Positions 194 to 51,716 of a stretch of 64,000 nucleotides of DNA are shown here, in pieces. The stretch covers positions 1-64,000 of the IMG/VR virus record IMGVR_UViG_3300048008_000449; one strand, given 5' to 3'. Position 1 is the stretch's first letter. Each line of letters opens with the position of its first letter. Under the pieces are notes generated by a model. It saw nothing but the letters and a program-made list of their open reading frames with translations, had not been told where the DNA came from and did no database searches. A program made the position numbers and the translations under genes.

Positions 194-1024
194 TTATAGA
201 TTTATAATTCTTTTAGCCATGCATAGGTCAGGCTTAACCAAGCTCTCATTTAATATATCAGCTTCAAAACATTGTAGCTTTGTACCAAACACAATTTGAT
301 GTGTTATCCATTGTGCATTAAAGAACCAAATGTCACCTGGATTAAAAGTAATATAATGTAATGGGTGGTGAAATTGATCCCATTGTTGTTCATTCCAAAC
401 ACATCTATTACGCATTTCAGTAATAAATGTATGTATATCGTTTTTGTTTAACTCACCTAAATTAAATTCATCTTTATAATCATAGTACATTTTTTCTAAG
501 TCAGGTCCAAAAGATAACACTCTAGGACGTTTCTTATCTAGTTGTACAAACATACGTATCTGTTGTTCATTGCCTGTATGTTGTTCATCTAGTTCGTCTA
601 GGTGTAGTTTATTTTCTACTAATGTATTGTATCTGTGACTGAGCATACGTTCGGTTGTTTTGTAATGTGGGAATAGCATATCAAATACTTCGTTCCAACC
701 TTGTTGTGATTGTTTATGCTTCTTATGAAACAAGTCTATTTGTTCCTCAGACCAATTACGTTCATCTCTTAATCTATTACGTTTTTTGATATGGCTGTTA
801 TACCATGGCATAATCCATTTATTATCGGGGATAGTCCAATCTGGTAAGTCGTTATAATAATCATAATCAAGTTGTGGAATAGTTAAGTTCTTAATAACCA
901 CTGGCCATCCGCTCTCAAATGCTTCGTATACCTTATAATTATCTGTTAAATCTTCTTTCTTTGCGTCAAACACATTGACAACAAAGTCGTCTCCTGCTAT
1001 AATATCTTTAGCGATTCGGGTCAT
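194..1024 (-). CDS. Kdo-hydroxylase (KdoO)-like Fe(II)/O2-dependent cupin hydroxylase
   Basis: Motifs LHLDE..QIRMFVQLD..RPRVLSFG and FNPGDIWFFNAQWITHQIVFG resemble the KdoO family LHxD..RILRVFxN..PRVW..G / F.PG..W..F.DQV.H pattern; start moved to the ATG at 1024 (GGAG RBS upstream) from the 1186 ORF-track start. Confidence 0.55.
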   Translation of the reverse strand: MTRIAKDIIAGDDFVVNVFDAKKEDLTDNYKVYEAFESGWPVVIKNLTIPQLDYDYYNDLPDWTIPDNKWIMPWYNSHIKKRNRLRDERNWSEEQIDLFHKKHKQSQQGWNEVFDMLFPHYKTTERMLSHRYNTLVENKLHLDELDEQHTGNEQQIRMFVQLDKKRPRVLSFGPDLEKMYYDYKDEFNLGELNKNDIHTFITEMRNRCVWNEQQWDQFHHPLHYITFNPGDIWFFNAQWITHQIVFGTKLQCFEADILNESLVKPDLCMAKRIINL

Positions 1025-1046
1025 ATGTACTCCATTATATATGTAG

Positions 1047-1060
1047 ATAAATATATTTAT
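1047..1060. promoter_or_regulatory. Perfect 14-bp palindrome ATAAATATATTTAT: two back-to-back T4-late-like (TATAAATA-type) motifs between divergent genes
   Basis: Read directly from the sequence; lies between the KdoO-like gene (-) and the first radical SAM gene (+). Confidence 0.5.
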
Positions 1061-1739
1061 GACAGTTGATAATGGTACATATGCTGGTTTAAATATAAAT
1101 TTTATGCGAGTTGGCAGAAGATTTAATGTTGATGCTAGTACCAGATGTAATTTATTATGCCCAGGTTGTACAAGAACACAAGACATGGCGGCTGGAAATC
1201 GTAATTGGGATATAACAGATTTAAAACTTGAATACTTACAAGCATTGTTACATCCTAGAAATAGAATTAGTTGTGTTACTTATAATGGTGCTCTTAGCGA
1301 TCCAATATACAGTGGTACAATGACAGAACAATTGGAATATATTAATACTTTAGAATTTAGACCCAGAGTAATTATTTCAACTAATGGCAGTGGACGTAAT
1401 GAAAAGTGGTGGAAACATTTTTCTAGTTTATTAAGAAAACAAGATTGGCTACAATTTAGCATTGACGGATTAGAAGATACTAATCACATATATAGAGTCA
1501 ATGCAAGATGGAATAGTATTATGGCAGGAGTAAAAACTGTCAGAGAAAATTGCAATGGAAGTCTATGGTGGAGATACGTAGTGTTTGAACACAATTATCA
1601 TCAAGTAGGTAAAGCTAAACAATTAGCTGAGGAGTTGGGATTTGATAAATTTCAACCAATGGTTGGTGATAGAAGAACTCCGGCACATATGTTATTAAAA
1701 AGTGCAACATGGCAAGAGATATTAAATGATATATCCTAG
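1059..1739 (+). CDS. Radical SAM protein, core only (SPASM domain encoded by the next gene)
   Basis: CNLLCPGC (CxxxCxxC), STNG, FSIDGLEDTNHIYR, VFEHNYHQV; paralogous to the N-terminal part of 3469-4530; true start may be slightly downstream. Confidence 0.9.
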   Translation: MTVDNGTYAGLNINFMRVGRRFNVDASTRCNLLCPGCTRTQDMAAGNRNWDITDLKLEYLQALLHPRNRISCVTYNGALSDPIYSGTMTEQLEYINTLEFRPRVIISTNGSGRNEKWWKHFSSLLRKQDWLQFSIDGLEDTNHIYRVNARWNSIMAGVKTVRENCNGSLWWRYVVFEHNYHQVGKAKQLAEELGFDKFQPMVGDRRTPAHMLLKSATWQEILNDIS

Positions 1740-2079
1740 ATGCAAAGTAGTAGGACCAAACGCTAACTCAGAAGCAATGTCAATGAGATTTGACGGCTAT
1801 GTTGTTCCATGTTGTCATATGAATAGTCAACATGCAATGGATAAGTTATCATTGTTCTTGGGTAAAGATGTAAAAAATATACACATTACAAGTGGACATA
1901 GTATAGATGAAATAAATACTAGCAAAGAATATAAACGTATTGAAGATAGTTGGAACACACCTACACCTTTTTCAATTTGTAAAAGTGCATGTGGTAGACC
2001 AGGTGAAATAGGTCCAGACATACATCGCACAGGAACACAATTCGTTCAAAAGACTTTAAACAAGGATACACATGAATAA
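1726..2079 (+). CDS. Stand-alone SPASM/Twitch Fe-S domain protein
   Basis: PRC..MSMRFDGYVVPCCHM..ICKSACG matches the C-terminal SPASM region of 3469-4530 (CPW..QIDPWGTVWPCCHV..CQRTCG). Confidence 0.8.
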   Translation: MIYPRCKVVGPNANSEAMSMRFDGYVVPCCHMNSQHAMDKLSLFLGKDVKNIHITSGHSIDEINTSKEYKRIEDSWNTPTPFSICKSACGRPGEIGPDIHRTGTQFVQKTLNKDTHE

Positions 2080-3139
2080 ATCAGTAAATGCATGGAGCGA
2101 GTTTCAACCGCTAAAAAAAGTAGTGCTTGGCGCTCCGTTTCCACCTGAAACATTTGATTGGCATAAGGACAAAGAGACTCGTGATGTTATGCGTCAGATC
2201 TTTACAGAAACAGCAGAGGACTTACAAGTGCTGGAGGGGATATTAAAGGGCAAAGGTATTGAAGTAATACGTCCAAAGAATATATTTACAATCACAGGTG
2301 AAGAACAGATTCAATTACCATGGATGCATTGTGGTTTTCCAAACCACCCATTAATGCCACGTGATACATTAATGCCATATGGTAATAGTATTTTTGAACT
2401 GTTTACAGGTAGCGATAATCGCTACTTTGAAAATCTCGCATATTACGATCATTGTAGTAAATGGTTTCGTGAAGGTGCAGATTGGGTTAGTATGCCAGGA
2501 GTACTAGTAGAGAGTGGTAAAAAATACGACCACTTTGTAAAAAACGATCGACTGCTTTATCATGCGGCTAATATGATAAAGTGTGGACGCCACGTTTTGT
2601 TTAGCCAACCTTACGAGGGAGACAATAAACGAGGCAGAGGAACGGCACTGGGCCGCGAATGGATTCAACGTGAAATAAAGTTGCGATATCCAGACACCCA
2701 ATTTTTGGACATACCAGTAGGAGGACACATCGACGGAAAAATAGCTCTACTAAAACCTGGCGTACTGATGACCTGGAATAAAAACTGGGTACCAGAAGAA
2801 ATGAAAAACTGGACTATTATTGAAGTAGATGATGACTTTGATATGCCCGAAGACTTTCAACAAACTCGTAAGCGTAGATTTCATAAAGAATATGTAAGCA
2901 AGTGGTTAGAGCATTGGGTAGGTTGTCCAGATGAAAGTGTGTTTGATGTTAATGTATTATCATTAGATGAAAGCACAGTTATTTGTACAGGAAAAAACGA
3001 ACAAGCATTTGCTGAAATGGAAGCACACGGCATTGAACCAATTTACTGGAATTTTAGACATCAGTATTTTTGGGATGGTGGCATTCACTGTTTAACAAGT
3101 GATATAGTTAGAGAAGGAGATTGTGAGAGTTATGTATAA
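2072..3139 (+). CDS. Amidinotransferase (arginine:glycine / inosamine-phosphate amidinotransferase family, pentein fold)
   Basis: NAWSEFQPLKKVVLG, PRD, GHIDG, GGIHCLTSD with the catalytic Asp/His/Cys pattern. Confidence 0.88.
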   Translation: MNKSVNAWSEFQPLKKVVLGAPFPPETFDWHKDKETRDVMRQIFTETAEDLQVLEGILKGKGIEVIRPKNIFTITGEEQIQLPWMHCGFPNHPLMPRDTLMPYGNSIFELFTGSDNRYFENLAYYDHCSKWFREGADWVSMPGVLVESGKKYDHFVKNDRLLYHAANMIKCGRHVLFSQPYEGDNKRGRGTALGREWIQREIKLRYPDTQFLDIPVGGHIDGKIALLKPGVLMTWNKNWVPEEMKNWTIIEVDDDFDMPEDFQQTRKRRFHKEYVSKWLEHWVGCPDESVFDVNVLSLDESTVICTGKNEQAFAEMEAHGIEPIYWNFRHQYFWDGGIHCLTSDIVREGDCESYV

Positions 3140-3476
3140 TCATTTAAAAAATTACATTGGAATATATCTATTAGCAATGGTATGTTTTCTAATATATGCA
3201 TCTGAACCAACAGATGAAATACCAGTTTGGATATGGTATCTTTTCATTCCAGTAGTTTTATGGAAAACGCCACCGTTTAATATTGGTGATTGGTTTTGGG
3301 GTAAAGTAGCAAGTTTTTGGATGTGGATATTGAAACCATTTACAAGATGGCAAAACACTTGGCCTACATGGGTAAAGTATGTGTTTGGTATTGTACTTAT
3401 TATATTGTTTGAAGAATATATTTTAAAGCCAGCAGGCTACACAATGTATCCTTGGAGAATAGATTTTAATGGCTGA
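3132..3476 (+). CDS. Small Trp-rich integral membrane protein, unknown function
   Basis: Several hydrophobic aromatic-rich segments; ATG at 3132 overlaps the upstream stop like neighbouring genes. Confidence 0.65.
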   Translation: MYNHLKNYIGIYLLAMVCFLIYASEPTDEIPVWIWYLFIPVVLWKTPPFNIGDWFWGKVASFWMWILKPFTRWQNTWPTWVKYVFGIVLIILFEEYILKPAGYTMYPWRIDFNG

Positions 3477-4530
3477 TATAATGGAATGGCATAAAAATGT
3501 TACTTCATTGCAGTTTGACATTAGTAGTCATTGCAATGCACGTTGCGGTGCATGTGTAAGAAACAAAGATGGCGGGGAAACTGAATCAAATTTAGAACTA
3601 GCACATTTTGATTTTGACTTATGGAAACGTATAGCATATGAAGATACTAAACGTTGGTATATACATAGACTAAATCTAAATGGAAATTGGGGCGATCCAA
3701 TGATGCATCCAAAATTAGTAGAAATGATGGAAGTATGGTTAGATGCACACCCAAGAAGTACACCATCAATTGCAACAAATGGAAGTATGAGAGGACCAAA
3801 GTTTTGGCATGACTTAGCTAGTGTAATGCATCACTTTCCAAATCATAAAGTAGACTTCTCAATTGATGGAATGGGAGACACACATAGCATATATCGTAGA
3901 CGTACAGACTTTAATAAAATTTGTGAAAATGTAAAATCGTTTTCCGAAGCAGGCGGGCATGCTACAATACAATTTACAATGTTTGAACATAACGAACATC
4001 AGCATAAAGAAGTTGAAGATTTAGCAAGGTCGTTAGGAGCAATGCAACTTGTTAAACGTAGAAGTCATTCTTCAAATATGGTTATAAAAGATAAAGATGA
4101 AGAATATAAAATAACAGCAACTGAAGGTATTCCAGAAGAAAGAATAAAATTAAAAGATGATAGAATTGAAAGTACAAATCCACACAAAGTACATATATTA
4201 GAAGCAAGTGATATGTATGATACTTATTTGAACACTTCAGAAAAACAAAAAACAAAATGTCCTTGGTACAATGCACAAGAGATTCAAATTGATCCTTGGG
4301 GTACAGTTTGGCCATGTTGTCATGTTAGTCTATTTGGAGTTCATTTAGAAAAGCATAATATTGCTAATGAAGTAGATGAAACATTTGTACAGGCTAGAAA
4401 AGATAATAATTTAAAAGATAGTTCTTTGTATGATATATTAAAGTCTGATTGGTATAACGAACATGTTAAGTTAAGCGTCAAAGGCGCAAAATGGAAAACA
4501 TGTCAACGAACATGTGGAGTTGAAGCATAA
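3469..4530 (+). CDS. Radical SAM protein with C-terminal SPASM/Twitch domain
   Basis: CNARCGAC, NGNWGDPM in place of GGEP, ATNG, FSIDG; C-terminal C..PCC..C...C. Confidence 0.92.
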   Translation: MADIMEWHKNVTSLQFDISSHCNARCGACVRNKDGGETESNLELAHFDFDLWKRIAYEDTKRWYIHRLNLNGNWGDPMMHPKLVEMMEVWLDAHPRSTPSIATNGSMRGPKFWHDLASVMHHFPNHKVDFSIDGMGDTHSIYRRRTDFNKICENVKSFSEAGGHATIQFTMFEHNEHQHKEVEDLARSLGAMQLVKRRSHSSNMVIKDKDEEYKITATEGIPEERIKLKDDRIESTNPHKVHILEASDMYDTYLNTSEKQKTKCPWYNAQEIQIDPWGTVWPCCHVSLFGVHLEKHNIANEVDETFVQARKDNNLKDSSLYDILKSDWYNEHVKLSVKGAKWKTCQRTCGVEA

Positions 4531-5780
4531 TGTATAAAAATCCTATGTTAGATGATCATAGATTCCCTACATGTTTAGCACCATGGAACGCATTAACTAT
4601 TAAGTGGGGCGGTGCAGTATTGCCTGACATTATTTACAATGGCAAGTTTGGAAACATTACAAGACAAACATTACCAGAGATATTAAACAGTGAAGAAGCA
4701 GTAGCATTGCGTAAGTCGCATGCAAGTAGAATAGTTCCAGAAGCATGTTTAGCATGTACCAAAAAAGAACAAAGCGGTAAAAGTCGTAGAATGTATTTTT
4801 GGGATAAACTTGATGTCGATGTTAAAAAAGGAAGTATTAAGAACACAGCAAACAGTAAGCCTGACATACGTTATTTAGATTTTACAATCAGTAATAAATG
4901 TAATTTAGCATGCATACATTGTAATCCTTTTGTAAGTACAGGGTGGACCAAAGATGGAAAGAAACTAAACAAAGAAAAGCCAGACTATTGGAAACAAGCA
5001 CAAATAGGATATCACGGTGTAGAAGATATGACATTCCTTGATAACTTGTTTGCTGATCCAGACTATTTTCGTAACCTACAGTGGGTAGCATTAAGAGGCG
5101 GAGAGCCATTGTATGATGAGAGTTGTAAAGCAATATTACAGTGGTTTATTGATCAAGGACTAGCAAAGAATATTATGCTAGACATTAGTACAAATGCTAC
5201 AGTTTTCGATGATGACTTTCAGGAGATATTTAAACACTTTAAGCATATTGAATTGCTTATCAGTATTGAAGCAGTAGATGAATTATACAGTGTAGTACGA
5301 GGAGGATCGTATACATTTAAAGAATTAGAAGAAAACATAGAAAAGTTTTATACATATCCTAACATTGAAGTTGTGTTTGCAGTAACAGTTATGTTAACAA
5401 ACGTATTTGGGTTAGACAAAGTATGGGACTGGTTTAAAGAAAAACACATGCATAGAGCAAGTATAAGCATGAGTAATGTTGTAGTTAATCCTACATATTT
5501 AAATATTGCATACATGCCAGATGTGTTAAAATATATTATGTATGATAAGCTATTGTCTATTCCAGATCAAAGCATTTGGCCTAAAGGCAGTTATCATGTA
5601 GACGAAATACATTACCAAACTGGAATACATGCTATCAGAGATGGATTACAAGTTGAGGTAAACGAAAAAGAACAAGAAAAGCAATGGGATTGGTTTGTCA
5701 AGTATACAAAAGACTTAGACAGATTACGTGGAACAAACACGTTTGAATTAATAAAGGAGTTAAAATTATATGAACAGTAA
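4530..5780 (+). CDS. Radical SAM protein with N-terminal SPASM/Twitch-like domain
   Basis: N-terminal CLAPWNAL..CLAC; CNLACIHC; GGEP; STNA; SIEA..YSVVRG. Confidence 0.93.
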   Translation: MYKNPMLDDHRFPTCLAPWNALTIKWGGAVLPDIIYNGKFGNITRQTLPEILNSEEAVALRKSHASRIVPEACLACTKKEQSGKSRRMYFWDKLDVDVKKGSIKNTANSKPDIRYLDFTISNKCNLACIHCNPFVSTGWTKDGKKLNKEKPDYWKQAQIGYHGVEDMTFLDNLFADPDYFRNLQWVALRGGEPLYDESCKAILQWFIDQGLAKNIMLDISTNATVFDDDFQEIFKHFKHIELLISIEAVDELYSVVRGGSYTFKELEENIEKFYTYPNIEVVFAVTVMLTNVFGLDKVWDWFKEKHMHRASISMSNVVVNPTYLNIAYMPDVLKYIMYDKLLSIPDQSIWPKGSYHVDEIHYQTGIHAIRDGLQVEVNEKEQEKQWDWFVKYTKDLDRLRGTNTFELIKELKLYEQ

Positions 5781-6708
5781 CCCAGATTTTGGTACCAGTG
5801 GCAACAGCGTCTGGAATCAACAATATTTTGATTTTTTAAATGAAACATTCTTTCCTAAAATTGATATCACTACAATTGCTGATGAATCAAATATTATGCT
5901 TGATAGATATCAAGGATGGATAGAAAGTAGTACATTAAATAAATTTAAAGGACTAGACGCATTTCCAATGCGTTATGCAAGCGTTGGTACTACGCAAGCG
6001 TTAGATTGGTGGCATTATTATTGTGCAGTTAACAACATGGATCTAAAAATGTTTAGAGGAGAGTACCCATATCATAGAGATGCATACTTACAAACTCATT
6101 TGGGTTGGGATGATTGTATTGAAGATTGTGGATTAATTGCAGGTGATGCAGTTGTAGTAAGTGTTCCATTTAGTGCAACAGGCAGACTTCCAATACAATG
6201 GGAAGACTTAATGAAAACATGTAACAGACTAAAGATTCCAGTGTTTGTTGATTGTGCATGGTTTGGAACTTGCTTTGGTATTACTGTTAACTTAGATGAA
6301 CCATGTATTAAAATGGTTGCATTTAGTACAACAAAAGGACTTAGTTGTGGTAACTGGCGTGCAGGTATTGTGTTTAGTAAAGTAAACGAAAAAGACTTTA
6401 AACGTGCTACTGATGGTAGCTTAGAAACACAAACAGATTGGAATCATGGTAATCATCTTAATACTGCTATTGCTAACAGATTAATGGCAGAGTTTTCACC
6501 AGATACTATTCCTAAAAAATATATGGCATCGCACATGGCAGTATGTAAACATTATGGATTAATTCCTACACAAACTGTACATATTGCAGAAGGTGCTCGT
6601 GGAACTGAATGGGACGTATTTCATAGAGATGAAACATACAATAGAATTAATATTTCAAAAGCATTGAAGCGACACAAGAACAAGGGAAACTTTTATGACA
6701 ACATATGA
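5770..6708 (+). CDS. PLP-dependent transferase (fold-type I, aminotransferase-like)
   Basis: VFVDCAWFG (DxA aromatic) and FSTTKGLSCGNWRAG (S.SK..G.R.G PLP-lysine motif). Confidence 0.75.
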   Translation: MNSNPDFGTSGNSVWNQQYFDFLNETFFPKIDITTIADESNIMLDRYQGWIESSTLNKFKGLDAFPMRYASVGTTQALDWWHYYCAVNNMDLKMFRGEYPYHRDAYLQTHLGWDDCIEDCGLIAGDAVVVSVPFSATGRLPIQWEDLMKTCNRLKIPVFVDCAWFGTCFGITVNLDEPCIKMVAFSTTKGLSCGNWRAGIVFSKVNEKDFKRATDGSLETQTDWNHGNHLNTAIANRLMAEFSPDTIPKKYMASHMAVCKHYGLIPTQTVHIAEGARGTEWDVFHRDETYNRINISKALKRHKNKGNFYDNI

Positions 6709-7147
6709 TGATCCTATTAACATAACAACTAAAGGACAATATCCAATTAGAGCCCATATGGTATTTAATAACATGGGTCCAGAAAACTGTGAAGATATCC
6801 TTTGGCAGAATGTAATAGATTCAACAAGTAATCTTGAAGGAAACGAAATAGGTGTAAGTGTAACACAGAGTTATCAATATACAAAGTTAAATGACGATCC
6901 AACTATTATGGTTAGATGGCAAGGTATTAAGACTACAAATGGTAATGAATTTAGAATTGGTCTAGGAAAAGGAATACCAGCAGATAAAAGAACACCACCT
7001 ATAATGTCTGGCAATATGAAAACCGGAGTGCAAGTCAATAGTACACTATCTATACAATCAGTAAAACTAGGTTGTGTAAATGGAGAGTTTGCAATTGAAA
7101 AAGATGGCAAATGGTATGCTATTCAAATAGGAGAAGCTATTGAATAA
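6695..7147 (+). CDS. Hypothetical beta-rich protein with no enzyme motif recognised
   Basis: 150-aa ORF overlapping both neighbours; no motif recognised. Confidence 0.7.
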   Translation: MTTYDDPINITTKGQYPIRAHMVFNNMGPENCEDILWQNVIDSTSNLEGNEIGVSVTQSYQYTKLNDDPTIMVRWQGIKTTNGNEFRIGLGKGIPADKRTPPIMSGNMKTGVQVNSTLSIQSVKLGCVNGEFAIEKDGKWYAIQIGEAIE

Positions 7148-8276
7148 ACTTCCTAGTAATGCTTGTGTGTATCCATTCAAAGCTGAAATGCTTATGCATG
7201 GACAACCTGCGACTCCTTGTTGTAGGTTTCATACTAGATTTTTAAAAGGAAAAGGTTTTAACGAAATACGTGAAACTATGATGCGTAATGAATGGCACCC
7301 AGGTTGTTATAAATGTAAATCAGATGAAGAAGTTAAAGGTAGCAGTATGAGAACTGAGGCTGACGAATTCTTTGATGACTTTACAGACACTGTACGTTTA
7401 GAGTACTTAGAAATAACAGTGGGTAGACTTTGCAATTTAGCATGTTTAAGTTGTGGAAGTGAATTCAGTCATACATGGGACAAAGACGAAATAGCATTGG
7501 GAATAAGTAGCGAAGACAAAATTAAAAAATTAAAAGAAGTACAAGAATATGATTTAGATAATTTAGATTTAAATAATTTAAAGCATGTTAAATTTATTAA
7601 AGTAACAGGTGGTGAACCATTTTTACACAAACAGTTTTTAAATCTTATAGTTAGGTTAGCGGACAGTGAACTAGCAGGACAAATTAGCTTAGAGATATTT
7701 ACAAATTGTACATGGTATCCAGCCAAACTTGAACTAGATGCATTAATGAAATTTAAACATATACAACTAAGTCCTAGCATAGATGGTGTAGGTAGTACAA
7801 ATGACTTACTACGTTACCCATCTAAGTGGGAAAAAATAGAAGCTACACTTGACAAGTGGATTGAACTTAGAGACGCTACAGGACGCTTAAATATAGCTAC
7901 AGCCACCACTGTAAGCGTTATTAACGCTCCACAGCTACATGAGTTTATACATTGGGCAAGAGTGCATAAAGGAATAGGAGTTATACTACAGACGGTATAT
8001 GAGCCACACTATATGAGTGTAGAGCATTGGCCAGATTGGTATAAACAAACATTAGATATGATTGTTGAACAGCAATTTTCAGGGTTCAACAAAAATGCAG
8101 GTAAATTTAAGACTGCATATAAACTTTTAAAGAAGCTATGCAAATCGCATAGTAAAAAAGACAATAGTATTATGTATAAGACAGAACTAAAACATATACT
8201 GAAACACCGAGGCCAAGACATTAGTATGGCACCAAAATTTAAGAATATATTAGAGTATCATGATAAACAAGGATAA
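7140..8276 (+). CDS. Radical SAM protein with N-terminal SPASM/Twitch-like domain
   Basis: ACVYPF..PCCRF..CYKC; CNLACLSC; TGGEPF; FTN; SIDG. Confidence 0.93.
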   Translation: MNKLPSNACVYPFKAEMLMHGQPATPCCRFHTRFLKGKGFNEIRETMMRNEWHPGCYKCKSDEEVKGSSMRTEADEFFDDFTDTVRLEYLEITVGRLCNLACLSCGSEFSHTWDKDEIALGISSEDKIKKLKEVQEYDLDNLDLNNLKHVKFIKVTGGEPFLHKQFLNLIVRLADSELAGQISLEIFTNCTWYPAKLELDALMKFKHIQLSPSIDGVGSTNDLLRYPSKWEKIEATLDKWIELRDATGRLNIATATTVSVINAPQLHEFIHWARVHKGIGVILQTVYEPHYMSVEHWPDWYKQTLDMIVEQQFSGFNKNAGKFKTAYKLLKKLCKSHSKKDNSIMYKTELKHILKHRGQDISMAPKFKNILEYHDKQG

Positions 8277-9519
8277 ACTAAAGAAAAGCAAAACATTCTG
8301 CATGCTACCGTTTATGCATATTTACGGAACAGCAGGCGGAGACATTGTGCCGTGTTGTGAGGCACAAGAAATCCCATTGAATAAACCAGGGGAGACAGCT
8401 CTTGAAAGCTGGAATAACGAAAACTATAAAGAGCTAAGACGGGCTTTGGCAGAGGACGAAAGACCAGAACGTTGTAATGTGTGCTGGCACTTAGAGGATA
8501 GCGGCATTGTAAGCAACCGTCAACAATGGGAAAAAGACAACTGGAAAGACTTCAGTGACAAAGTTAAAGTCAATGATGATTTCAGTGTTGATAATAAACC
8601 TATGTGGGTAGAACTTAAAGTAAGTAACTTTTGCAATTTAAAATGTATTATGTGCAGTACACATAGTAGTTATAAACGTGTAAAAGACTTAGATATTATT
8701 AAGAAGTATACAAAAGATGGCTACGAAACTAGACTTTTACGACCTACGGATTTATTCGCAAGTTTAAATGAATGGCCTGATCTATGGGATAATGTTCACA
8801 CACTACAATTTACAGGGGGTGAACCAATCATTAATCAAGAGCATTATGACTTACTAGAAGGAATACCCACAGAAGTTAAATCAAAAATTAAATTACGTTA
8901 TGCAACAAATATAAGTCATATTAAATTTAAAAAATACGACTTAGTTGAAATGTGGAGACAATTTAAACATGTTAACATTAAAGTAAGCATGGATGGCGTT
9001 GAAGAAGTATACAATTATATTAGACAAGATGGTGATTGGGATACAGTATATAACAATATGCTTGTTCTTAATGCAGAACCAACAATAGATCTTGCTGTTG
9101 GTATAACAGTGCAATCTCATAACATTTATCATATGCCAGAGTTTTATCAATTTTGGAAAGAAAGTCCAATTGAATTAAAGTTTATTACAGCCAACGTATT
9201 ACAAACGCCAAAGTATCTAAGACCAAACTTATGGCCTCAACCATATAGAACTAAAATAATTGATAGACTAAGAGAAGCATATGAATGGTATCCAGAAATG
9301 GAAAGGTTTATAACGTACATGGAAAATAATCCACCAGATGAATTAAACTATACCAAGATGAGAAAATATACTAGAGATCTTGAAAACAGGTATCCCAAAG
9401 ATACTACACTAAAGTCAATGATAAAAGATCATTTAGGAATAAAACTGGAAGGAATGGACGAGGTCGATCAGCGAGTGAAAGATCAAGAAGCAGCATTTTT
9501 TAAAGGATTCAAACGATGA
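8260..9519 (+). CDS. Radical SAM protein with N-terminal SPASM/Twitch-like domain
   Basis: FCMLPFMH..PCC..CNVC; CNLKCIMC; TGGEP; YATN; SMDG..YIR. Confidence 0.94.
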   Translation: MINKDKLKKSKTFCMLPFMHIYGTAGGDIVPCCEAQEIPLNKPGETALESWNNENYKELRRALAEDERPERCNVCWHLEDSGIVSNRQQWEKDNWKDFSDKVKVNDDFSVDNKPMWVELKVSNFCNLKCIMCSTHSSYKRVKDLDIIKKYTKDGYETRLLRPTDLFASLNEWPDLWDNVHTLQFTGGEPIINQEHYDLLEGIPTEVKSKIKLRYATNISHIKFKKYDLVEMWRQFKHVNIKVSMDGVEEVYNYIRQDGDWDTVYNNMLVLNAEPTIDLAVGITVQSHNIYHMPEFYQFWKESPIELKFITANVLQTPKYLRPNLWPQPYRTKIIDRLREAYEWYPEMERFITYMENNPPDELNYTKMRKYTRDLENRYPKDTTLKSMIKDHLGIKLEGMDEVDQRVKDQEAAFFKGFKR

Positions 9520-9656
9520 AAAATAAATTGCTAACAGAAATTAAAAATTTGGAACAAGTAATATATATTTCAGAACTAGAAAAAGTTTCAGATAAAACTA
9601 TGACTAACCTTAGAAATAAATTAACAAAATTACAAAAACAGGCAGAGAATGATTAA
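9516..9656 (+). CDS. 46-aa basic, coiled-coil-like small protein (absent from ORF track)
   Basis: MKNKLLTEIKNLEQVIYISELEKVSDKTMTNLRNKLTKLQKQAEND; fills the gap exactly, with an ATGA overlap upstream and an 8-nt overlap downstream. Confidence 0.6.
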   Translation: MKNKLLTEIKNLEQVIYISELEKVSDKTMTNLRNKLTKLQKQAEND

Positions 9657-10926
9657 AGGCCAAAAAGATTGGGATTATCAATTTGTAAGTGACTGTGAAA
9701 TAGTAAATGTGTTTATACCAAAAAACACACATCTCAGCGAACACGAAGAATTGAAACAAAAGCTACTGTTATTGCAACAAGTAGAATGTGATAATCACTT
9801 GACATCAAGCATAGTTAACTTGTATAATACTAGTAGTATTGACTGGATTAACCATGTTAGAAAAATGGGACACAAATATGTTGCATTTTGGTTTGATGGC
9901 TGTTGGCCTAAAACAGAAGGTATTGAGAAAAAGATACTAACCTATATAACTAGATTAGAAAAGAAAGATTGGATAACCGCAGTACATCCAAAATACTTAG
10001 ATAGTTTAATGTTACTGAATATAGACGAATTTATTGCATGGCCTGCTAAAGCACCTAACTTTGGAAACTATAAGTTTTGGGCAGAGAATTGGATAAGTGA
10101 CTGTACAGTAGAATTAAGTAAAACCATAGAAAGAAACATAGTAGTGGGTGCACCACAAACAGATCCAGAGAACTTTTTAAATGGACTAATGAATGAGAAA
10201 TATACAGATCATACTATTTCAAGAGGTGCAAGAGTAATTATAAAACGTAAAAATATACCAAGTAGTCCTGTATATTTTGTTAATACAGAGCCACTAGATG
10301 TTGACATTATTGAGCAAAATAAGGGTAAAATATACCAACAATATGTGGGTACAACTGCAGGTTTTAAACTGCTATATAACGCATATAACTACGGTTTTGA
10401 TTTACACAGTACAAAGTTCGTCTGGTACGATTTCGACGCACACAGCCTCAAATTTAAGCGTCTAATGGTGGAAAATTGGGACGGAATTGACTATCCAGCG
10501 TTTGTTGAACAGTTTTGTAGCAAGTATCCAGAAGCAAACTCATTATTGCTAAAAGATGCTAAAAAGCAATGGGCAAGTATTCTTGAACACTTTGGCGGAG
10601 AAAACAATTGGCTAGATTTTTGGTGTCAAGTTGGATGTATGGAACACGAATTTATTGAAGTAGATTTAATCAGCGGACACAAGCAAATAACAGACAAATT
10701 AGATAACGTTAGTACATTCTTTTGGACAAGCAACATATACAGTTATGTATTGCTAAAAGTAATGAGCGAACCATTTAAGTTAGAACGTAGTTTTGCTGAC
10801 TTAGTAACAAGATTACAAGAGATTGATAACTGTTGGTTCTTTGGAACAGATCCAAATGATAATAACTTAAATTGCAATGTAAAATCTATATTAGGTTATA
10901 GTACAAACGAAAGTATAGGAACGTAA
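9649..10926 (+). CDS. Uncharacterised two-domain enzyme-like protein, paralog of 10926-12326
   Basis: Shared blocks with the next ORF: YFVNTE/YILNTE, VWYDFD..KF...ENWDG.DY / IWADYS..KW...NEWNG.DF, FWTSNIY/LQCSNIF. Confidence 0.7.
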   Translation: MIKGQKDWDYQFVSDCEIVNVFIPKNTHLSEHEELKQKLLLLQQVECDNHLTSSIVNLYNTSSIDWINHVRKMGHKYVAFWFDGCWPKTEGIEKKILTYITRLEKKDWITAVHPKYLDSLMLLNIDEFIAWPAKAPNFGNYKFWAENWISDCTVELSKTIERNIVVGAPQTDPENFLNGLMNEKYTDHTISRGARVIIKRKNIPSSPVYFVNTEPLDVDIIEQNKGKIYQQYVGTTAGFKLLYNAYNYGFDLHSTKFVWYDFDAHSLKFKRLMVENWDGIDYPAFVEQFCSKYPEANSLLLKDAKKQWASILEHFGGENNWLDFWCQVGCMEHEFIEVDLISGHKQITDKLDNVSTFFWTSNIYSYVLLKVMSEPFKLERSFADLVTRLQEIDNCWFFGTDPNDNNLNCNVKSILGYSTNESIGT

Positions 10927-12326
10927 TGAAAATATTTATAAGAAGAAAAGAAATATGTCATATATCAGTCAGTGGTGTATTATGTAAAGAGTTAGAAGAA
11001 AAAGCATCTGACGATTATATTTCTATCTTAAAAACAGCAACTAATATAAATCTAAACCTTAGTACTGAATCGTCTTATATACATGATATTGAAGTGGACG
11101 CAGTATGGGATGCGTTTGAAAATTTAAGAGATCTTGGATTTAAAGTAGCAGTGTTATGGGCTGAAGGTAGTTGGCCTTGTGATCCTGATATAGATGATCA
11201 AATATTAGAATCAGTTGAGGAATGGGACAAAGAAGAATGGGGTTGTGCAGGACATATTTTAGATAGACCTGGAAAACGCAAGCCTACATTCCATCATCAG
11301 TGTGTTATTGTTAATTTACAAAAACAAACAGAAAGTATTCAATGTAGGATTCGTGAGTATGAAGCAAGTACAGAACACTTTCACGATGACTACACACCTA
11401 AATGGATTAAACCAACAGGAGCTTCTAACTTATATGAATATGTTCCTTCTAGTAGTTGGAGTTACGAAGAAGCAAAGAAACCATATAACTTGTTTAATTG
11501 TATATTGAGAACATCTCTAAAAAAAGGTTTAAAAGTTTTTAATATAGGATATAATATACGTAATTGTAAAGTATGTACATACCCTGAAGATGATATTAAA
11601 TGGACAGAAGAACAATTATTTAAAGAATACAGTGATCCAAAGATTATATATGATATAAAAGAAAACTATCCAGACAAGTTTTGTTTACTTGAAGCTAAGG
11701 TAATGTCTGAAACTTCTTTATATATTCTCAACACAGAATCAGTACCACATGTAATACAAGATGATATACAAGTAATGGTATGTCCGTGTAGTGGGTTACA
11801 TCAATTTAAATTTATAGAAAATAGTTTAGAGGTAATGGAAAAAGTTATTTGGGCAGACTATAGTTCTTATGCAGTTAAGTGGATGGAAATACTAATCAAC
11901 GAATGGAATGGGAAAGACTTTCATGACTTCTTTGAAACTAACAAACATAGACTTGATTATGATGGAATGTATGTATATGGACATGGTACATGGGAAAAGT
12001 TTTTAGATAGTTTTGATAGCAAAGAACAGTGGTTAAGTGTGTGGAATAAGATAAGAAATTTAGAGCATGATTTTAATGTAATAAATATTGTTAATGAAAG
12101 TAATAAAATAATAGAACTAATCCCACATGATAAGAATGTGTTATTACAATGTAGTAATATCTTCATGTATGAATCAAATTATTTTAACAAAGGATTAGAT
12201 ACAACATTTAATTCTATATCATATGTAAGAAGTGTACAAAACATTTCAAACAAAGTTTACTTGAATGGTGATTTTAATGGAAATTTTTATGATATGGTAA
12301 ACATAGGTAGGAGAAAATTTATATGA
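10926..12326 (+). CDS. Uncharacterised two-domain enzyme-like protein, paralog of 9649-10926
   Basis: See shared motif blocks; N-terminal GHILDR..FHHQCVIVNL is glycosyltransferase-like by eye (weak). Confidence 0.7.
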   Translation: MKIFIRRKEICHISVSGVLCKELEEKASDDYISILKTATNINLNLSTESSYIHDIEVDAVWDAFENLRDLGFKVAVLWAEGSWPCDPDIDDQILESVEEWDKEEWGCAGHILDRPGKRKPTFHHQCVIVNLQKQTESIQCRIREYEASTEHFHDDYTPKWIKPTGASNLYEYVPSSSWSYEEAKKPYNLFNCILRTSLKKGLKVFNIGYNIRNCKVCTYPEDDIKWTEEQLFKEYSDPKIIYDIKENYPDKFCLLEAKVMSETSLYILNTESVPHVIQDDIQVMVCPCSGLHQFKFIENSLEVMEKVIWADYSSYAVKWMEILINEWNGKDFHDFFETNKHRLDYDGMYVYGHGTWEKFLDSFDSKEQWLSVWNKIRNLEHDFNVINIVNESNKIIELIPHDKNVLLQCSNIFMYESNYFNKGLDTTFNSISYVRSVQNISNKVYLNGDFNGNFYDMVNIGRRKFI

Positions 12327-13096
12327 CAATGGTAGATATACGAGAGTATAGAAAATTACATATGTTTAAGCCAGTTGATGAAAGAACACAAGAACATTTC
12401 TCAGCATGGGAAGATGTTAAAAAGAATCCAGCATTGGCTGACGAAATACAATTACAACCAAAAGAAGACGATGCAGATTTTATTAGAGATAATACTAAAG
12501 TGCCTTGGGTTGAAATTAAATCAAAAGTATTTTTTCCAGCACCTAGTATAAAAGCTGAAGCACAACAACTATTACGTACAGAATGTTTTACATCTCATAG
12601 AGCAGATAATTCAGGAGGCTGGATGAGCTTGTGTGTTTATGGAATGAGTAGTGTACATACAAATAGTACACACGATTATCAACTGCCAGAGTTTGCAGAA
12701 AGAGATCTAAGTGACTGGACAGACATTGCAAAGTTTTGCCCTATTACAAAAGACTGGCTAGAAAATAATGGACTGTATGATAGATATACACGTGTTCGTT
12801 TTGTAGTAGTATTGCCCGGCGGCTGGATAAGTCCACATGCAGATGTAGATAGTAAAGTAGGACTTGGTGCTACTAATGTATCATTAAACAATCCAGACGG
12901 ATGTGGATTAGTAATGGAAGAATACGGAAAAATGCCATTTGAAGATGGTAACATATTTAAGATTAATACTGGATACGAACATGCAGTATACAATAACTCA
13001 GGGATGCCTAGATTTCATATGATATTAGATGGCGATGTGAGTGATTATCAAAGAAATGAAATAGACAAGAATTATGCCAAAATGTTTGATGTTTAA
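12323..13096 (+). CDS. Aspartyl/asparaginyl beta-hydroxylase-like 2OG-Fe(II) oxygenase
   Basis: RVRFVVVLPGGWISPHAD (HxD) and INTGYEHAVYN..RFHMI. Confidence 0.85.
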   Translation: MTMVDIREYRKLHMFKPVDERTQEHFSAWEDVKKNPALADEIQLQPKEDDADFIRDNTKVPWVEIKSKVFFPAPSIKAEAQQLLRTECFTSHRADNSGGWMSLCVYGMSSVHTNSTHDYQLPEFAERDLSDWTDIAKFCPITKDWLENNGLYDRYTRVRFVVVLPGGWISPHADVDSKVGLGATNVSLNNPDGCGLVMEEYGKMPFEDGNIFKINTGYEHAVYNNSGMPRFHMILDGDVSDYQRNEIDKNYAKMFDV

Positions 13097-14126
13097 ACAC
13101 GGAGTAACAATAGGTCCTGTCGGAAACGTCAGACCTTGTTGTATGTACATGAATCAAGATTTAGACAAGCGTTATAATGACGAAGGCTGGCGAGAAGAGT
13201 TTGACCAACTATATGAAGAAAGTCTTACTAAATGGTTGCCCAATTGTTACGAGTGTAAAGCAGAAGAAGACAGAGGCGAAAATAGTTTACGTATGGATGC
13301 TAACAGATGGTTTGAAGGCACAGAAGGAATTCAGTATTGGGATTTAAAATTGCATAACACATGCAATTTAACTTGTGTTATGTGCAATCCTGTTAGCAGT
13401 AGTAAGTGGCAAACACTAGTAAACAATAACCCTGAAGAAGAATGGCTTGGTGTTGTTAAAAAAGAAGCACAAATGAAAACTGGTTGGCATAAAGATATAT
13501 TGCCACTAATGATGGAACAACTTTATGATACAAAATATTTAAAATTTACAGGTGGCGAACCATTAATGATTCCACATGTAAGAAAGATTATTAAAAAATT
13601 ATATGACGAGGAAGTATCACCAGCGGTGCGTCTAAGTATTATTACTAATGGAACAATTCCATTAGATGCTGAAATGCTTAAAATGCTATTAACATTTAAG
13701 CGTGTACTGTTTATTGTAAGTGTTGACGGACTAGGCGAGAGATTTGAATATATCAGACAAGGATCAAATTGGCAAGAAGTTGAAAAGAATCTTCAACAGT
13801 TTAAAAAAATTGAAACAATGCACAACAACTTTGGATTGAAAATTAACTTCCTTCCAATGGCAGTTAATGCTGCTCAGCATGATGAGGCAGAACAATGGGC
13901 TAAGAAGAATAAATATGAATTTAGTCATAGTGTTGAAATATATAGACCAAAGTATTTGACATATGCTAGTTTAAATGCTAAACTAAGAGATAGATATAAT
14001 ATAACTTCGCATTACGAATATGACGAAGAACAATACCAACAGCTATTAAAACATATGGCTATAAAAGATAAGTTATCAGGCACTAACTTTAAGAGTGCTT
14101 GTCCGGAGTTTTTTGAAGATGAGTAA
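13074..14126 (+). CDS. Radical SAM protein with N-terminal SPASM/Twitch-like domain
   Basis: PKC..GNVRPCC..CYEC; CNLTCVMC; TGGEP; ITNG; SVDG..YIR. Confidence 0.93.
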   Translation: MPKCLMFKHGVTIGPVGNVRPCCMYMNQDLDKRYNDEGWREEFDQLYEESLTKWLPNCYECKAEEDRGENSLRMDANRWFEGTEGIQYWDLKLHNTCNLTCVMCNPVSSSKWQTLVNNNPEEEWLGVVKKEAQMKTGWHKDILPLMMEQLYDTKYLKFTGGEPLMIPHVRKIIKKLYDEEVSPAVRLSIITNGTIPLDAEMLKMLLTFKRVLFIVSVDGLGERFEYIRQGSNWQEVEKNLQQFKKIETMHNNFGLKINFLPMAVNAAQHDEAEQWAKKNKYEFSHSVEIYRPKYLTYASLNAKLRDRYNITSHYEYDEEQYQQLLKHMAIKDKLSGTNFKSACPEFFEDE

Positions 14127-15336
14127 AAAATTACCAAGTGATACATTTTGTGTATTACCATTCATGCATGCCGCGGTTAATCCTGGCGGCGGGTTTCGTG
14201 TTTGTTGTAACAGTAATCCTGCTAACAATAAAGTACTAAAGGATGATGGAAGTGGCAAAGCGTATAGAATATTTAAAGATGATATCAACGATGCATGGAA
14301 TAGTAAATGGTATAAAAATATTCGTAAGCAGTTTATTAACGGAGAACGTCCTGAAACATGTCAAAGATGTTTCCGTGAAGAAGATGCAGGCATAAGAAGT
14401 CCACGTACAGGATATAATGAAAAATGGTATAAAGATGATGTTAATGTAGCTGAAGAAATACCATTGGATATACGTTATGTAGATTTGCGTTTAGGTAATT
14501 TATGTAATTTAAAATGTAGAATGTGTAATCCATGGAGTAGTAGTATGTGGGTTAAAGACTGGAACAAAGTAACAGGACTTGCAGAACTTACACCAAACGA
14601 TCCATTAAGTGATGAAGAACTAGATTATATGGAAGTTATGAAAGTATGGCCTGATCGTAAACAAACAGGATTAAACTTTGTAGAGATTGCAGGAACTATT
14701 GAAGAAATTTATTTAACAGGCGGTGAACCTACGTTAGCAACAAGTCAATATGCATTATTTGATTATTGTATTGAAAACGATTTAGCAAGTGGTATTAAAT
14801 TAAAGTATAACACAAACTTAACAAATATACCACAAAAGATGATTGACTATTGGAGTCACTTCAAAGGTGTACAACTTAATACAAGTATTGACGCAACAGG
14901 TGACAGAGATAGATATGTTAGATATCCAAGTAGTTGGCCAAAAATAGAACAAACATTTGACAAGCTGTTAGCATTACCAAATGTAGCAATTCAGGTACAT
15001 TGTACAGTACAAGTATTAAATATGTGTGCTATGAGTGAATTGTTTGATTGGACTAGAAGTAAAGGCATACCTGACAAAGACATATATTTAAATATTCTTA
15101 ATCATCCAGAAATGTACAACATTCGTACATTACCTAAAGAATTAAAACAACTAGCAGAACAGCGTTTACAACCATATTTAGACATACCAAAAGTAGCAGA
15201 TACAATTAAGTATATGTGGGCTGAGGATTGGCACGAAAAACGTTGGAAGGAATTTGTTGATTTTAATATGAAAACAGATGAATTACAAAAAGGTGACTTA
15301 CTAACAGTAGCCCCAGAATTTAAGAATTTTGTTTAG
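14119..15336 (+). CDS. Radical SAM protein with N-terminal SPASM/Twitch-like domain
   Basis: FCVLPFMH..RVCC..CQRC; CNLKCRMC; TGGEP; YNTN; SID..YVRYPS.W; start set at ATG 14119. Confidence 0.94.
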   Translation: MSKKLPSDTFCVLPFMHAAVNPGGGFRVCCNSNPANNKVLKDDGSGKAYRIFKDDINDAWNSKWYKNIRKQFINGERPETCQRCFREEDAGIRSPRTGYNEKWYKDDVNVAEEIPLDIRYVDLRLGNLCNLKCRMCNPWSSSMWVKDWNKVTGLAELTPNDPLSDEELDYMEVMKVWPDRKQTGLNFVEIAGTIEEIYLTGGEPTLATSQYALFDYCIENDLASGIKLKYNTNLTNIPQKMIDYWSHFKGVQLNTSIDATGDRDRYVRYPSSWPKIEQTFDKLLALPNVAIQVHCTVQVLNMCAMSELFDWTRSKGIPDKDIYLNILNHPEMYNIRTLPKELKQLAEQRLQPYLDIPKVADTIKYMWAEDWHEKRWKEFVDFNMKTDELQKGDLLTVAPEFKNFV

Positions 15337-15338
15337 CC

Positions 15339-15345
15339 ATAAATA
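15339..15345 (+). promoter_or_regulatory. ATAAATA late-type promoter motif in the only clear intergenic gap of the cluster
   Basis: CATAAATAG followed by an AAGGAG RBS and the ATG at 15370. Confidence 0.5.
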
Positions 15346-15369
15346 GTGCTATAACAAGGAGACAATACA

Positions 15370-16035: not shown

Positions 16036-16048
16036 GTAAGTGAGATAA

Positions 16049-51690: not shown

Positions 51691-51716
51691 AAAAACCCAG
51701 TAAATACTAGGCTTTT
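51691..51716 (-). terminator. Possible terminator after the DNA polymerase gene
   Basis: AAAAGCCTAGTA-TT-TACTGGGTTTTT imperfect hairpin with T-run at the polymerase stop. Confidence 0.45.

What the first reader, a model, noticed from the sequence alone, without database searches (positions are those of the whole stretch)
194..1024. Kdo-hydroxylase-like gene divergently linked to the rSAM cluster
Seen: HxD and cupin motifs resembling KdoO, sharing a ~35-bp divergent control region with the first rSAM gene. Known: KdoO hydroxylates Kdo to Ko in the LPS core. Inference: the cluster may act on LPS or another acidic sugar (host receptor masking, superinfection exclusion, or a virion glycan). This is the best substrate clue in the window.
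Basis: partly seen in the sequence, partly recalled or inferred. Interest (0 to 1): 0.6.

Follow-up and report, generated by a model that had tools for sequence, protein, structure and literature searches.

The report
KdoO-like iron oxygenase beside amidinotransferase
The gene is a real iron/2-oxoglutarate oxygenase whose closest known relative is the LPS enzyme KdoO, but it is a distant branch that always travels with an amidinotransferase and radical-SAM genes in marine giant phages and in Bdellovibrio-like bacteria. It therefore more likely tailors that cluster's unknown product than hydroxylates Kdo.

Summary
Window 194-1024 (-) is a 276-aa gene with an invariant H141-x-D143...H242 triad, and 34 bp separate it from the first rSAM gene.

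The KdoO resemblance is also real:
- The AlphaFold model's best solved match is KdoO (Z 20.2 against 11.4 for the next fold).
- A widened family profile hits only KdoO in the PDB (E 1.6e-13).
- hhalign against proteins carrying PF11004 gives 99.8% probability over 276 columns.

The protein itself does not match PF11004, and its intermediate relatives score only 18-39 bits. It is a divergent branch, not a KdoO orthologue.

Its conserved partner is an amidinotransferase of the HsvA/SxtG/StrB1 type. That gene lies within about 1.2 kb in every locus with enough flank. In one phage lineage the whole module is oxygenase, amidinotransferase and one rSAM/SPASM enzyme. The same multi-rSAM cluster, oxygenase included, occurs in Bdellovibrionia MAGs. 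The 205-kb record holds no KdsA, KdsB or WaaA.

The LPS/Kdo reading is therefore unsupported but not excluded. The best reading is a tailoring hydroxylase for an amine- or guanidine-bearing product of the cluster, substrate unknown. I rate it a new variant of a known kind, of moderate interest.

The parts
194..1024 (-). 276-aa Fe(II)/2-oxoglutarate oxygenase of the KdoO-like (PF11004-related) superfamily. Metal triad H141 (604-602), D143 (598-596), H242 (301-299). R131, R157, N161, R168, W233 and G247 are conserved across the superfamily.
1025..1058 (.). 34-bp divergent intergenic region. GGAG ribosome-binding site for the minus-strand gene at 1033-1030.
1047..1060 (.). Perfect 14-bp palindrome ATAAATATATTTAT, conserved in relatives. 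It reads NATAAATA on both strands, which resembles a T4-type late promoter, so it is a candidate bidirectional promoter (inference).
1059..1739 (+). Radical SAM core (226 aa), the first half of a split rSAM/SPASM enzyme. It lies between the oxygenase and the amidinotransferase only in the window, its identical twin L016, and L020; in L024 it also flanks the oxygenase, but the contig ends before an amidinotransferase could be seen.
1726..2079 (+). 117-aa SPASM-domain piece, the second half of the split rSAM enzyme.
2072..3139 (+). 355-aa amidinotransferase (pentein fold; C-terminal GGIHCLT with the catalytic Cys). It is the constant neighbour of the oxygenase.
3123..3476 (+). 117-aa Trp-rich small protein that looks like a membrane protein (judged by eye; no transmembrane prediction was run). 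It is 92-97% conserved in L006/L007/L028/L029 (39% in L030) and missing from other relatives.
3469..4530 (+). 353-aa rSAM/SPASM (twitch-type) enzyme, the third member of the minimal three-gene module seen in the lineage at 60% identity.
4530..24629 (+). The rest of the cluster: about ten more rSAM/SPASM genes, an aminotransferase-like gene (5770-6708), an Asp/Arg-hydroxylase-like 2OG oxygenase (12323-13096), a nitroreductase-like gene (15370-16035) and several unknowns. At least 10 of these families are shared with Bdellovibrionia clusters.

Best explanation
The gene encodes a soluble, non-haem Fe(II)/2-oxoglutarate-dependent oxygenase on the KdoO scaffold. Fe(II) is held by H141, D143 and H242. 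Conserved R131, R157, R168 and N161 are taken to bind 2-oxoglutarate and probably an anionic group of the substrate (inference). The protein is not a KdoO orthologue. It belongs to a separate, deeply conserved branch whose members work inside a biosynthetic module built around an arginine-dependent amidinotransferase and twitch/SPASM radical SAM enzymes. The most likely role is a tailoring hydroxylation, or a related oxidation, of the amine- or guanidine-bearing intermediate that the amidinotransferase makes or uses. That intermediate could be an amino sugar or cyclitol, a polyamine or an amino-acid derivative. In the phage the gene is probably transcribed from a palindromic, T4-late-type promoter shared with the cluster. 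Shown here: the fold, the triad, homology to the KdoO family, and the conserved gene neighbourhood. Inferred: the reaction type, the substrate class and the promoter.
For: - Fold: AF2 model with pLDDT 83.8. KdoO is the top hit by Foldseek (E 5e-11) and by VIA-align (Z 20.2, 243 residues aligned, next fold Z 11.4). The nearest ESM Atlas cluster is 'Kdo hydroxylase family', TM 0.80.
- Sequence: the widened profile A2 hits only KdoO in the PDB (E 1.6e-13) and aligns H141/D143/H242 with KdoO H146/D148/H260, and R157/R168 with R162/R174. 62 of 65 distant relatives carry PF11004. hhalign of A1 against A6 gives 99.8% probability, E 2e-30, over 276 columns.
- Context: the amidinotransferase is identified by HsvA 5e-25, SxtG 7e-20 and StrB1 2e-16. 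It lies within about 1.2 kb of the oxygenase in all 27 loci with enough flank, in either orientation. A three-gene module (oxygenase, amidinotransferase, rSAM) stands alone in L002-4 and L034-36.
- Wider conservation: relatives at 24-34% identity still sit beside rSAM genes. Six Bdellovibrionia/Bdellovibrionales MAG loci keep the oxygenase inside an array that shares at least 10 gene families with the window.
- Promoter: the palindrome is conserved. ATAAATA is enriched 21-30 nt upstream of starts.
Against: - No substrate is identified, and no enzyme of the cluster has been characterised.
- KdoO is the only characterised member of this superfamily, so a Kdo-like acidic sugar cannot be excluded. 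The three conserved arginines shared with KdoO would fit an anionic substrate.
- The rSAM/SPASM enzymes and the Asp/Arg-hydroxylase-like protein would also fit a peptide pathway.
- Caulobacter phage CcrPW carries a homologue with no rSAM or amidinotransferase nearby, so the link is not universal across the superfamily.
- The RNA-library contigs identical to the window cover the amidinotransferase and the rSAM gene but not this gene; contigs cannot show absence.
Confidence: 0.6

Rival explanations
1. It is a genuine Kdo (or other ulosonic-acid) 3-hydroxylase. The phage remodels host LPS inner core, or a Kdo-containing glycan, during infection, and the rSAM/amidinotransferase genes decorate the same sugar.
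For: KdoO is by far the closest characterised protein. The cluster also holds an Asp/Arg-hydroxylase-family protein; from my own knowledge, the lipid A hydroxylase LpxO belongs to that family. A small, apparently membrane-spanning protein follows the amidinotransferase. In Synechococcus phage S-SCSM2R a partial amidinotransferase homologue lies directly beside KdsB, KdsA and 2OG oxygenases. In Campylobacter phage CP220 the rSAM + amidinotransferase module is followed by two glycosyltransferase-like genes and a PAP2 phosphatase. Both the phages and the Bdellovibrionia attack Gram-negative cells.
Against: The protein has no PF11004 match at all. The profile of the close family reached no protein with a strong PF11004 score among 1.84 billion (best 7e-18). 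The 205-kb record has no KdsA, KdsB or WaaA, though it is only about 56% complete. The S-SCSM2R 2OG proteins are unrelated to this family. The constant partner is an amidinotransferase, and Kdo has no amine for it to act on.
Confidence: 0.12
2. It is a peptide- or protein-modifying oxygenase in a RiPP-like pathway: the rSAM/SPASM enzymes cross-link or epimerise a peptide, and the oxygenase hydroxylates or cleaves it.
For: SPASM/twitch rSAM enzymes are typical peptide maturases; the rSAM353 protein gives sub-threshold hits to PapB, SkfB, DynA and YydG models. MicC, an aKG/Fe enzyme first spotted through a KdoO-like predicted fold, cleaves a triceptide to a C-terminal amide (PMC12912966). Asp/Arg hydroxylase family members act on peptides (my own knowledge).
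Against: Only the three enzymes of the minimal module are shared with the window cluster; no small ORF near them is co-conserved as a precursor would be. The cluster is tightly packed, with no obvious precursor gene. The amidinotransferase is closest to small-molecule enzymes. MicC's crystal structure is closest to KanJ, not KdoO. The widened profile finds no PDB sequence other than KdoO.
Confidence: 0.15
3. It takes part in nucleotide or DNA-base hypermodification that protects phage DNA, with amidino or guanidino chemistry on a base side chain.
For: Campylobacter phages, whose dG is fully replaced by 7-deazaguanine derivatives, carry unexplained rSAM + amidinotransferase modules (PMC2853527; PMC10516641). 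In L002 the trio lies near PTPS/QueD-like, ferredoxin and phosphoribosyltransferase genes. rSAM and PLP enzymes take part in known thymidine hypermodifications (my own knowledge).
Against: The same cluster sits on long Bdellovibrionia contigs, up to 917 kb. No DpdA/TGT-like gene or DNA glycosylase-like gene was seen in the cluster by Pfam. KdoO-like enzymes have no known nucleic-acid substrate.
Confidence: 0.08

Closest known systems
KdoO, Kdo 3-hydroxylase (Methylacidiphilum infernorum structures 5YKA/5Y9I/6A2E; Pfam PF11004 Kdo_hydroxy)
   Same: Whole-chain fold (Z 20.2, 243 of 276 residues aligned). The HxD...H triad and two or three arginines align. Similar length, about 280-300 aa. Homology is shown by profile searches.
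   Different: Only 16-18% identity. There is no direct PF11004 match. The gene is phage-borne and locked to an amidinotransferase/rSAM module, whereas characterised KdoO acts on Kdo2-lipid A in LPS core assembly (my own knowledge). No Kdo pathway genes lie on the record.
rSAM + 'glycine amidinotransferase' module of Campylobacter phages CP220/CPt10 (Timms et al. 2010, PMC2853527)
   Same: A phage-borne, unexplained cluster of about five rSAM genes with one pentein-type amidinotransferase.
   Different: The amidinotransferase is only 21-25% identical. The one CP220 hypothetical tested (gp082) is not KdoO-like. CP220 adds glycosyltransferase-like and PAP2 genes that were not detected in the window by Pfam (several window ORFs had no Pfam or NCBIfam hit).
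MicC, an aKG/Fe enzyme of the minviopeptin triceptide RiPP cluster (PMC12912966)
   Same: An unannotated 2OG oxygenase next to an rSAM/SPASM enzyme, first recognised through a KdoO-like predicted fold.
   Different: MicC's crystal structure is closest to KanJ. It acts on a peptide, and no sequence link to the present family was found (one search lists only KdoO).
Small-molecule amidinotransferase pathways that include 2OG oxygenases, e.g. cylindrospermopsin CyrA/CyrI and streptomycin StrB1 (my own knowledge)
   Same: An amidinotransferase of the HsvA/SxtG/StrB1/AGAT type combined with an oxidative tailoring enzyme and an aminotransferase-like protein.
   Different: Those pathways use other 2OG oxygenase families and have no array of about 13 rSAM enzymes. 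None of them is known from phages.

Membership tests
Fe(II)/2-oxoglutarate oxygenase superfamily (DSBH/cupin fold) | Double-stranded beta-helix core | tested here: met
   AF2 model with pLDDT 83.8. 197 PDB hits at E<=0.001; all those listed are 2OG/JmjC oxygenases. 67 chains at Z>=8.
Fe(II)/2-oxoglutarate oxygenase superfamily (DSBH/cupin fold) | 2-His-1-carboxylate facial triad HxD/E...H | tested here: met
   H141, D143 and H242 are invariant in A1, A2, A3 and A6 and align with KdoO H146, D148 and H260.
Fe(II)/2-oxoglutarate oxygenase superfamily (DSBH/cupin fold) | 2OG-dependent turnover | not testable with these tools
   This needs an enzyme assay. Conserved R131, R157 and R168 are only candidate 2OG/substrate binders.
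Kdo_hydroxy (PF11004) family in the broad sense | Match to the Pfam model above the 25-bit cut-off | tested here: not met
   There is no hit at E<=0.1 or at E<=10 in the six-frame search. The nearest relatives, P0119 and P0121, also have none, and P0124-P0128 score 18-25 bits.
Kdo_hydroxy (PF11004) family in the broad sense | Full-length homology to family members by profile methods | tested here: met
   hhalign of A1 against A6 gives 99.8% probability, E 2.3e-30, over 276 columns. 22 of the 29 A6 members match PF11004 at E<=1e-5. A2 against the PDB finds only KdoO, E 1.6e-13.
KdoO proper (Kdo 3-hydroxylase of LPS core) | Orthology to the characterised enzymes (B. ambifaria, Y. pestis, M. infernorum) | tested here: inconclusive
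   Identity to MiKdoO is 16-18%. The family profile reached no protein with a strong PF11004 score.
KdoO proper (Kdo 3-hydroxylase of LPS core) | Activity on Kdo2-lipid A giving Ko | not testable with these tools
   This is a biochemical assay. The KdoO structure paper (PMC6186499) was not held, so substrate-site residues could not be compared.
KdoO proper (Kdo 3-hydroxylase of LPS core) | Presence of a Kdo/LPS pathway for it to act in | tested here: not met
   PF00793 (KdsA), PF02348 (KdsB) and PF04413 (WaaA) have no match on the 205-kb record. The record is about 56% complete, and a host enzyme set could still supply Kdo.

The most novel reading that the evidence does not exclude
The oxygenase, the amidinotransferase and the twitch/SPASM rSAM enzyme form the core of an undescribed biosynthetic pathway. 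It is expanded to more than 10 rSAM enzymes in some genomes and is shared by marine T4-like giant phages and predatory Bdellovibrionia. Its product would be a hydroxylated, guanidino-bearing metabolite or envelope decoration used when attacking Gram-negative cells. The KdoO-like enzyme would then be the first member of its superfamily with a non-Kdo substrate.
Probability: 0.35. Interest if true: 0.8.

Novelty: new variant of a known kind. Interest (0 to 1): 0.5.

Why it matters
KdoO is the only characterised member of its fold family. This work shows a deep sister branch with the catalytic site intact but a different, strictly conserved genomic partner. That suggests the scaffold has at least one other substrate class.

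The gene also marks a compact three-gene module: oxygenase, amidinotransferase and one rSAM enzyme. That module is a tractable way into the otherwise opaque arrays of about 13 rSAM genes in marine giant phages. Related arrays have stood unexplained in Campylobacter phages since 2010. The cluster's presence in Bdellovibrionia as well hints at a function tied to attack on Gram-negative cells.

For annotation, the practical message is that 'Kdo hydroxylase' should not be transferred to these proteins.

Tried and rejected
- Direct family scans of the protein (Pfam, PHROGs, NCBIfam) and phmmer or the close-family profile against the PDB gave nothing. Structure and iterated profiles were needed.
- megablast of the first 8 kb against phage genomes found no match.
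- tblastn in phages found only Caulobacter phage CcrPW gp101, which lies in a tRNA array with no informative neighbours.
- The KdoO structure paper was not held, so KdoO's substrate-binding residues could not be compared.
- I tested whether CP220 gp082 or the two S-SCSM2R 2OG oxygenases are KdoO-like. hhalign probability was 0.2% for each, so they are not.
- I looked for a conserved small ORF (a candidate precursor peptide) around the minimal module. Only the three enzymes are shared.
- The unknown cluster proteins (425, 466, 382, 323, 187, 150 and 117 aa) got no NCBIfam name (the 121-aa ORF only a sub-threshold rSAM_STM4011 hit), and the 425-, 466- and 312-aa proteins have no PDB sequence match.
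- Context look-ups for P0121, P0126 and P0132 returned contigs too short to use. P0136 lies beside a methyltransferase and an ABC-F gene, which is not informative.
- The search for related loci with the 14-sequence alignment A3 failed for lack of a conserved stretch. I repeated it with four sequences.
- RNA-library contigs cover the neighbouring genes but not this one in the identical strain, and only a piece in a relative. Contigs cannot prove or disprove transcription.
- No binding claim is made.

Full report
**What is there**

The window is the first 64 kb of a 204,772-bp IMG/VR virus record that CheckV rates about 56% complete. It is 34% G+C and encodes a T4-type DNA polymerase, so I treat it as a fragment of a marine T4-like giant phage.

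On the minus strand an ORF runs from the ATG at 1024 to the stop at 194 and gives 276 aa. The frame stays open back to 1186. Homologues, however, begin at the same MTRIA, and a GGAG sits 5 nt before the ATG at 1024. The next gene on the plus strand, a radical SAM core, starts at 1059, which leaves 34 bp between the two genes.

The gene is real and under constraint. A word search finds 114 homologues at 60-93% identity in marine metagenomes, some on contigs longer than 300 kb. 24 IMG/VR loci carry the gene.

**The KdoO resemblance**

Direct scans gave nothing: Pfam, PHROGs, NCBIfam, and phmmer or the close-family profile against the PDB. Because the protein was left open, I ran the large profile search and a structure prediction.

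- **Model.** The AlphaFold model, built on 27 homologues, has pLDDT 83.8 and pTM 0.85.
- **Solved structures.** Foldseek puts the five KdoO entries first (E 5e-11 to 3e-10, TM about 0.63), followed by FIH and JmjC enzymes at E about 1e-6 to 1e-5. The Foldseek-independent search gives KdoO 5Y9I at Z 20.2 (243 residues, rmsd 3.4 Å), while the next fold, JMJD7, scores Z 11.4.
- **ESM Atlas.** The nearest cluster is 'Kdo hydroxylase family protein', with TM 0.80 and a feature score of 0.96.
- **Distant relatives.** The profile of the close family found 112 relatives among 1.84 billion representatives. 62 of the 65 full-length distant ones carry PF11004 Kdo_hydroxy, but weakly: the best E-value is 7e-18, and several score near or below the 25-bit cut-off.
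- **Widened profile.** A profile that includes these relatives hits one PDB sequence only, KdoO, at E 1.6e-13 over residues 20-311. It aligns H141/D143/H242 with KdoO H146/D148/H260, and R157/R168 with R162/R174.
- **Profile against profile.** hhalign of the phage family against an alignment of PF11004-bearing proteins gives 99.8% probability, E 2e-30, over 276 columns.

The protein is nevertheless a remote branch: it has 16-18% identity to KdoO and no direct Pfam match. It is not an orthologue.

**What it travels with**

The 355-aa protein at 2072-3139 is an amidinotransferase. It matches HsvA at 4.9e-25, SxtG at 7e-20, StrB1 at 1.6e-16 and AGAT at about 1e-13, and it has the C-terminal GGIHCLT catalytic-Cys motif.

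tblastn of the window's cluster proteins against all fetched loci shows this gene within about 1.2 kb of the oxygenase in every locus with enough flank, 27 of 27. In most loci the two genes are directly adjacent. They are divergent in most lineages and co-directional in L002-4, L025-26 and L034-36. The amidinotransferase is better conserved (74-93% identity) than the oxygenase (60-90%).

In the lineage at 60% identity, which is another giant phage carrying ClpP, ClpX, IF3 and S21 genes, the whole module is three genes: oxygenase, then amidinotransferase (81% identical to the window's), then one rSAM/SPASM enzyme (43% identical to window 3469-4530). No other rSAM lies within 10 kb. In the window, in its 100%-identical twin record L016, and in L020, a split rSAM (1059-1739 plus 1726-2079) has been inserted between the oxygenase and the amidinotransferase. 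In L024 the split rSAM also flanks the oxygenase, but the contig ends there.

Relatives at only 24-34% identity still lie beside rSAM genes. A scan of reference genomes places these relatives in Pseudobdellovibrionaceae, Bdellovibrionales and Bdellovibrionia MAGs, on contigs up to 917 kb. There the oxygenase sits inside an array that shares at least ten gene families with the window cluster:
- the amidinotransferase (45% identity);
- the aminotransferase-like protein (40-44%);
- the Asp/Arg-hydroxylase-like protein (31-35%);
- several distinct rSAM families;
- a 121-aa protein (57%).

The oxygenase is thus an old, integral member of this cluster and not a chance neighbour.

**The LPS idea**

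Several results give it no support:
- The record holds no KdsA, KdsB or WaaA. The record is incomplete, and a host could supply Kdo.
- The oxygenase fails the Pfam model.
- Kdo offers no amine for the amidinotransferase, which is the constant partner.

Some hints keep the idea alive at about 0.1:
- KdoO is the only characterised relative.
- The arginines shared with KdoO would suit an anionic substrate.
- The cluster has a PF05118 protein; by my own knowledge the lipid A hydroxylase LpxO belongs to that family.
- A Trp-rich small protein that looks membrane-spanning follows the amidinotransferase.
- Synechococcus phage S-SCSM2R has KdsB, KdsA, a partial amidinotransferase homologue and 2OG oxygenases side by side, although those oxygenases are unrelated to this family.
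- Campylobacter phage CP220's rSAM + amidinotransferase module ends with two glycosyltransferase-like genes and a PAP2 phosphatase.

**The peptide (RiPP) idea**

It is suggested by the SPASM enzymes and by MicC (PMC12912966). Against it, no conserved small ORF accompanies the trio, and MicC's crystal structure is closest to KanJ rather than KdoO.

**The DNA-modification idea**

It is suggested by the Campylobacter phages (PMC2853527 and PMC10516641). Against it, the cluster also occurs on long bacterial contigs.

**Most likely mechanism**

The protein is an Fe(II)/2OG oxygenase that hydroxylates, or otherwise oxidises, the amine- or guanidine-bearing intermediate handled by the amidinotransferase and the rSAM enzymes. 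The fold, the catalytic triad, the homology and the conserved linkage are shown. The reaction and the substrate class are inferred.

**The control region**

The 34-bp spacer holds the ribosome-binding site for the oxygenase gene. It also holds most of a perfect 14-bp palindrome, ATAAATATATTTAT (1047-1060), which runs into the ATG at 1059 and is unique in the window. The palindrome is conserved in relatives whether the plus-strand gene is the split rSAM or the amidinotransferase.

It reads NATAAATA on both strands. By my own knowledge, TATAAATA is the T4 late promoter and NATAAATA the cyanomyovirus form.

In the window ATAAATA occurs 22 times. Six copies are oriented within 60 nt upstream of a start, where about 0.8 would be expected, and five of those lie 21-30 nt upstream, including the one before the oxygenase gene. 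A bidirectional late promoter is therefore a reasonable inference, but it is untested. The plain sigma-70 scan is not enriched in this region.

**Expression**

The DNA occurs in many seawater metagenomes. In RNA libraries, contigs identical to the window cover the upstream gene, the amidinotransferase and the rSAM353 gene, but not 194-1024. In one library a relative's contig covers 257-522. Contigs show presence only, so this evidence is weak either way.

**Verdict**

The thing is a new, context-defined variant of the KdoO-like oxygenase family, and its substrate is unknown. The amidinotransferase and the minimal three-gene module are the better handles for finding the substrate.

Noticed in passing
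window 1047-1060: Perfect 14-bp palindrome ATAAATATATTTAT, conserved in the intergenic region of relatives. It reads NATAAATA, a T4-type late-promoter-like motif, on both strands. ATAAATA is enriched 21-30 nt upstream of starts (e.g. 15339, 27207, 42899, 59354).
   Followed up: partly
window 1059-24629: About 13 radical SAM genes in one co-directional array. Many have the SPASM/twitch hit N-terminal to the rSAM core, which is the reverse of the usual order. rSAM353's best NCBIfam hit is the N_Twi_rSAM model, below its cut-off. At least 10 of the cluster's families have one-to-one counterparts in Bdellovibrionia MAGs (L045-L050).
   Followed up: partly
window 3123-3476: 117-aa Trp-rich small protein that looks like a membrane protein, directly after the amidinotransferase. 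It is 92-97% identical in L006/L007/L028/L029 (39% in L030) and absent from other relatives.
   Followed up: no
window 12323-13096: A second 2OG oxygenase in the cluster, of the Asp/Arg beta-hydroxylase family (PF05118, E 1.6e-11). It is conserved in the Bdellovibrionia clusters at 31-35% identity.
   Followed up: no
L006 14756-15901; L033 8857-9930; L024 3243-4373: A second, divergent amidinotransferase paralogue (23-28% identity) lies a few kb from the oxygenase in some relatives.
   Followed up: no
L014 (Synechococcus phage S-SCSM2R, record 212-217 kb): KdsB, KdsA, a 'glycine amidinotransferase' and two 2OG-Fe(II) oxygenases lie side by side. The paper reports the amidinotransferase and one oxygenase in the virion proteome (PMC12801897).
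   Followed up: partly
L015 (Campylobacter phage CP220, record 70.7-80.7 kb): A module of five rSAM genes plus an amidinotransferase is followed by two nucleotide-diphospho-sugar-transferase-like genes and a PAP2 phosphatase. Its function has been unknown since 2010.
   Followed up: partly
window 54405-55709 and 51715-54408: Another radical SAM gene lies immediately upstream of the T4-type DNA polymerase gene, followed by a protein with a weak DNA-methyltransferase-like hit (55696-56808).
   Followed up: no
window 30032-30979: A ribose-phosphate pyrophosphokinase (PRPP synthetase) homologue with a weaker nicotinamide phosphoribosyltransferase hit. It is an auxiliary nucleotide/NAD metabolism gene.
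   Followed up: no
L016 (IMGVR_UViG_3300046750_000365): A second IMG/VR record is 100% identical over the region and extends beyond the window's left end. The 60-aa open end at window 3-185 is the C-terminus of a gene convergent with the oxygenase.
   Followed up: partly
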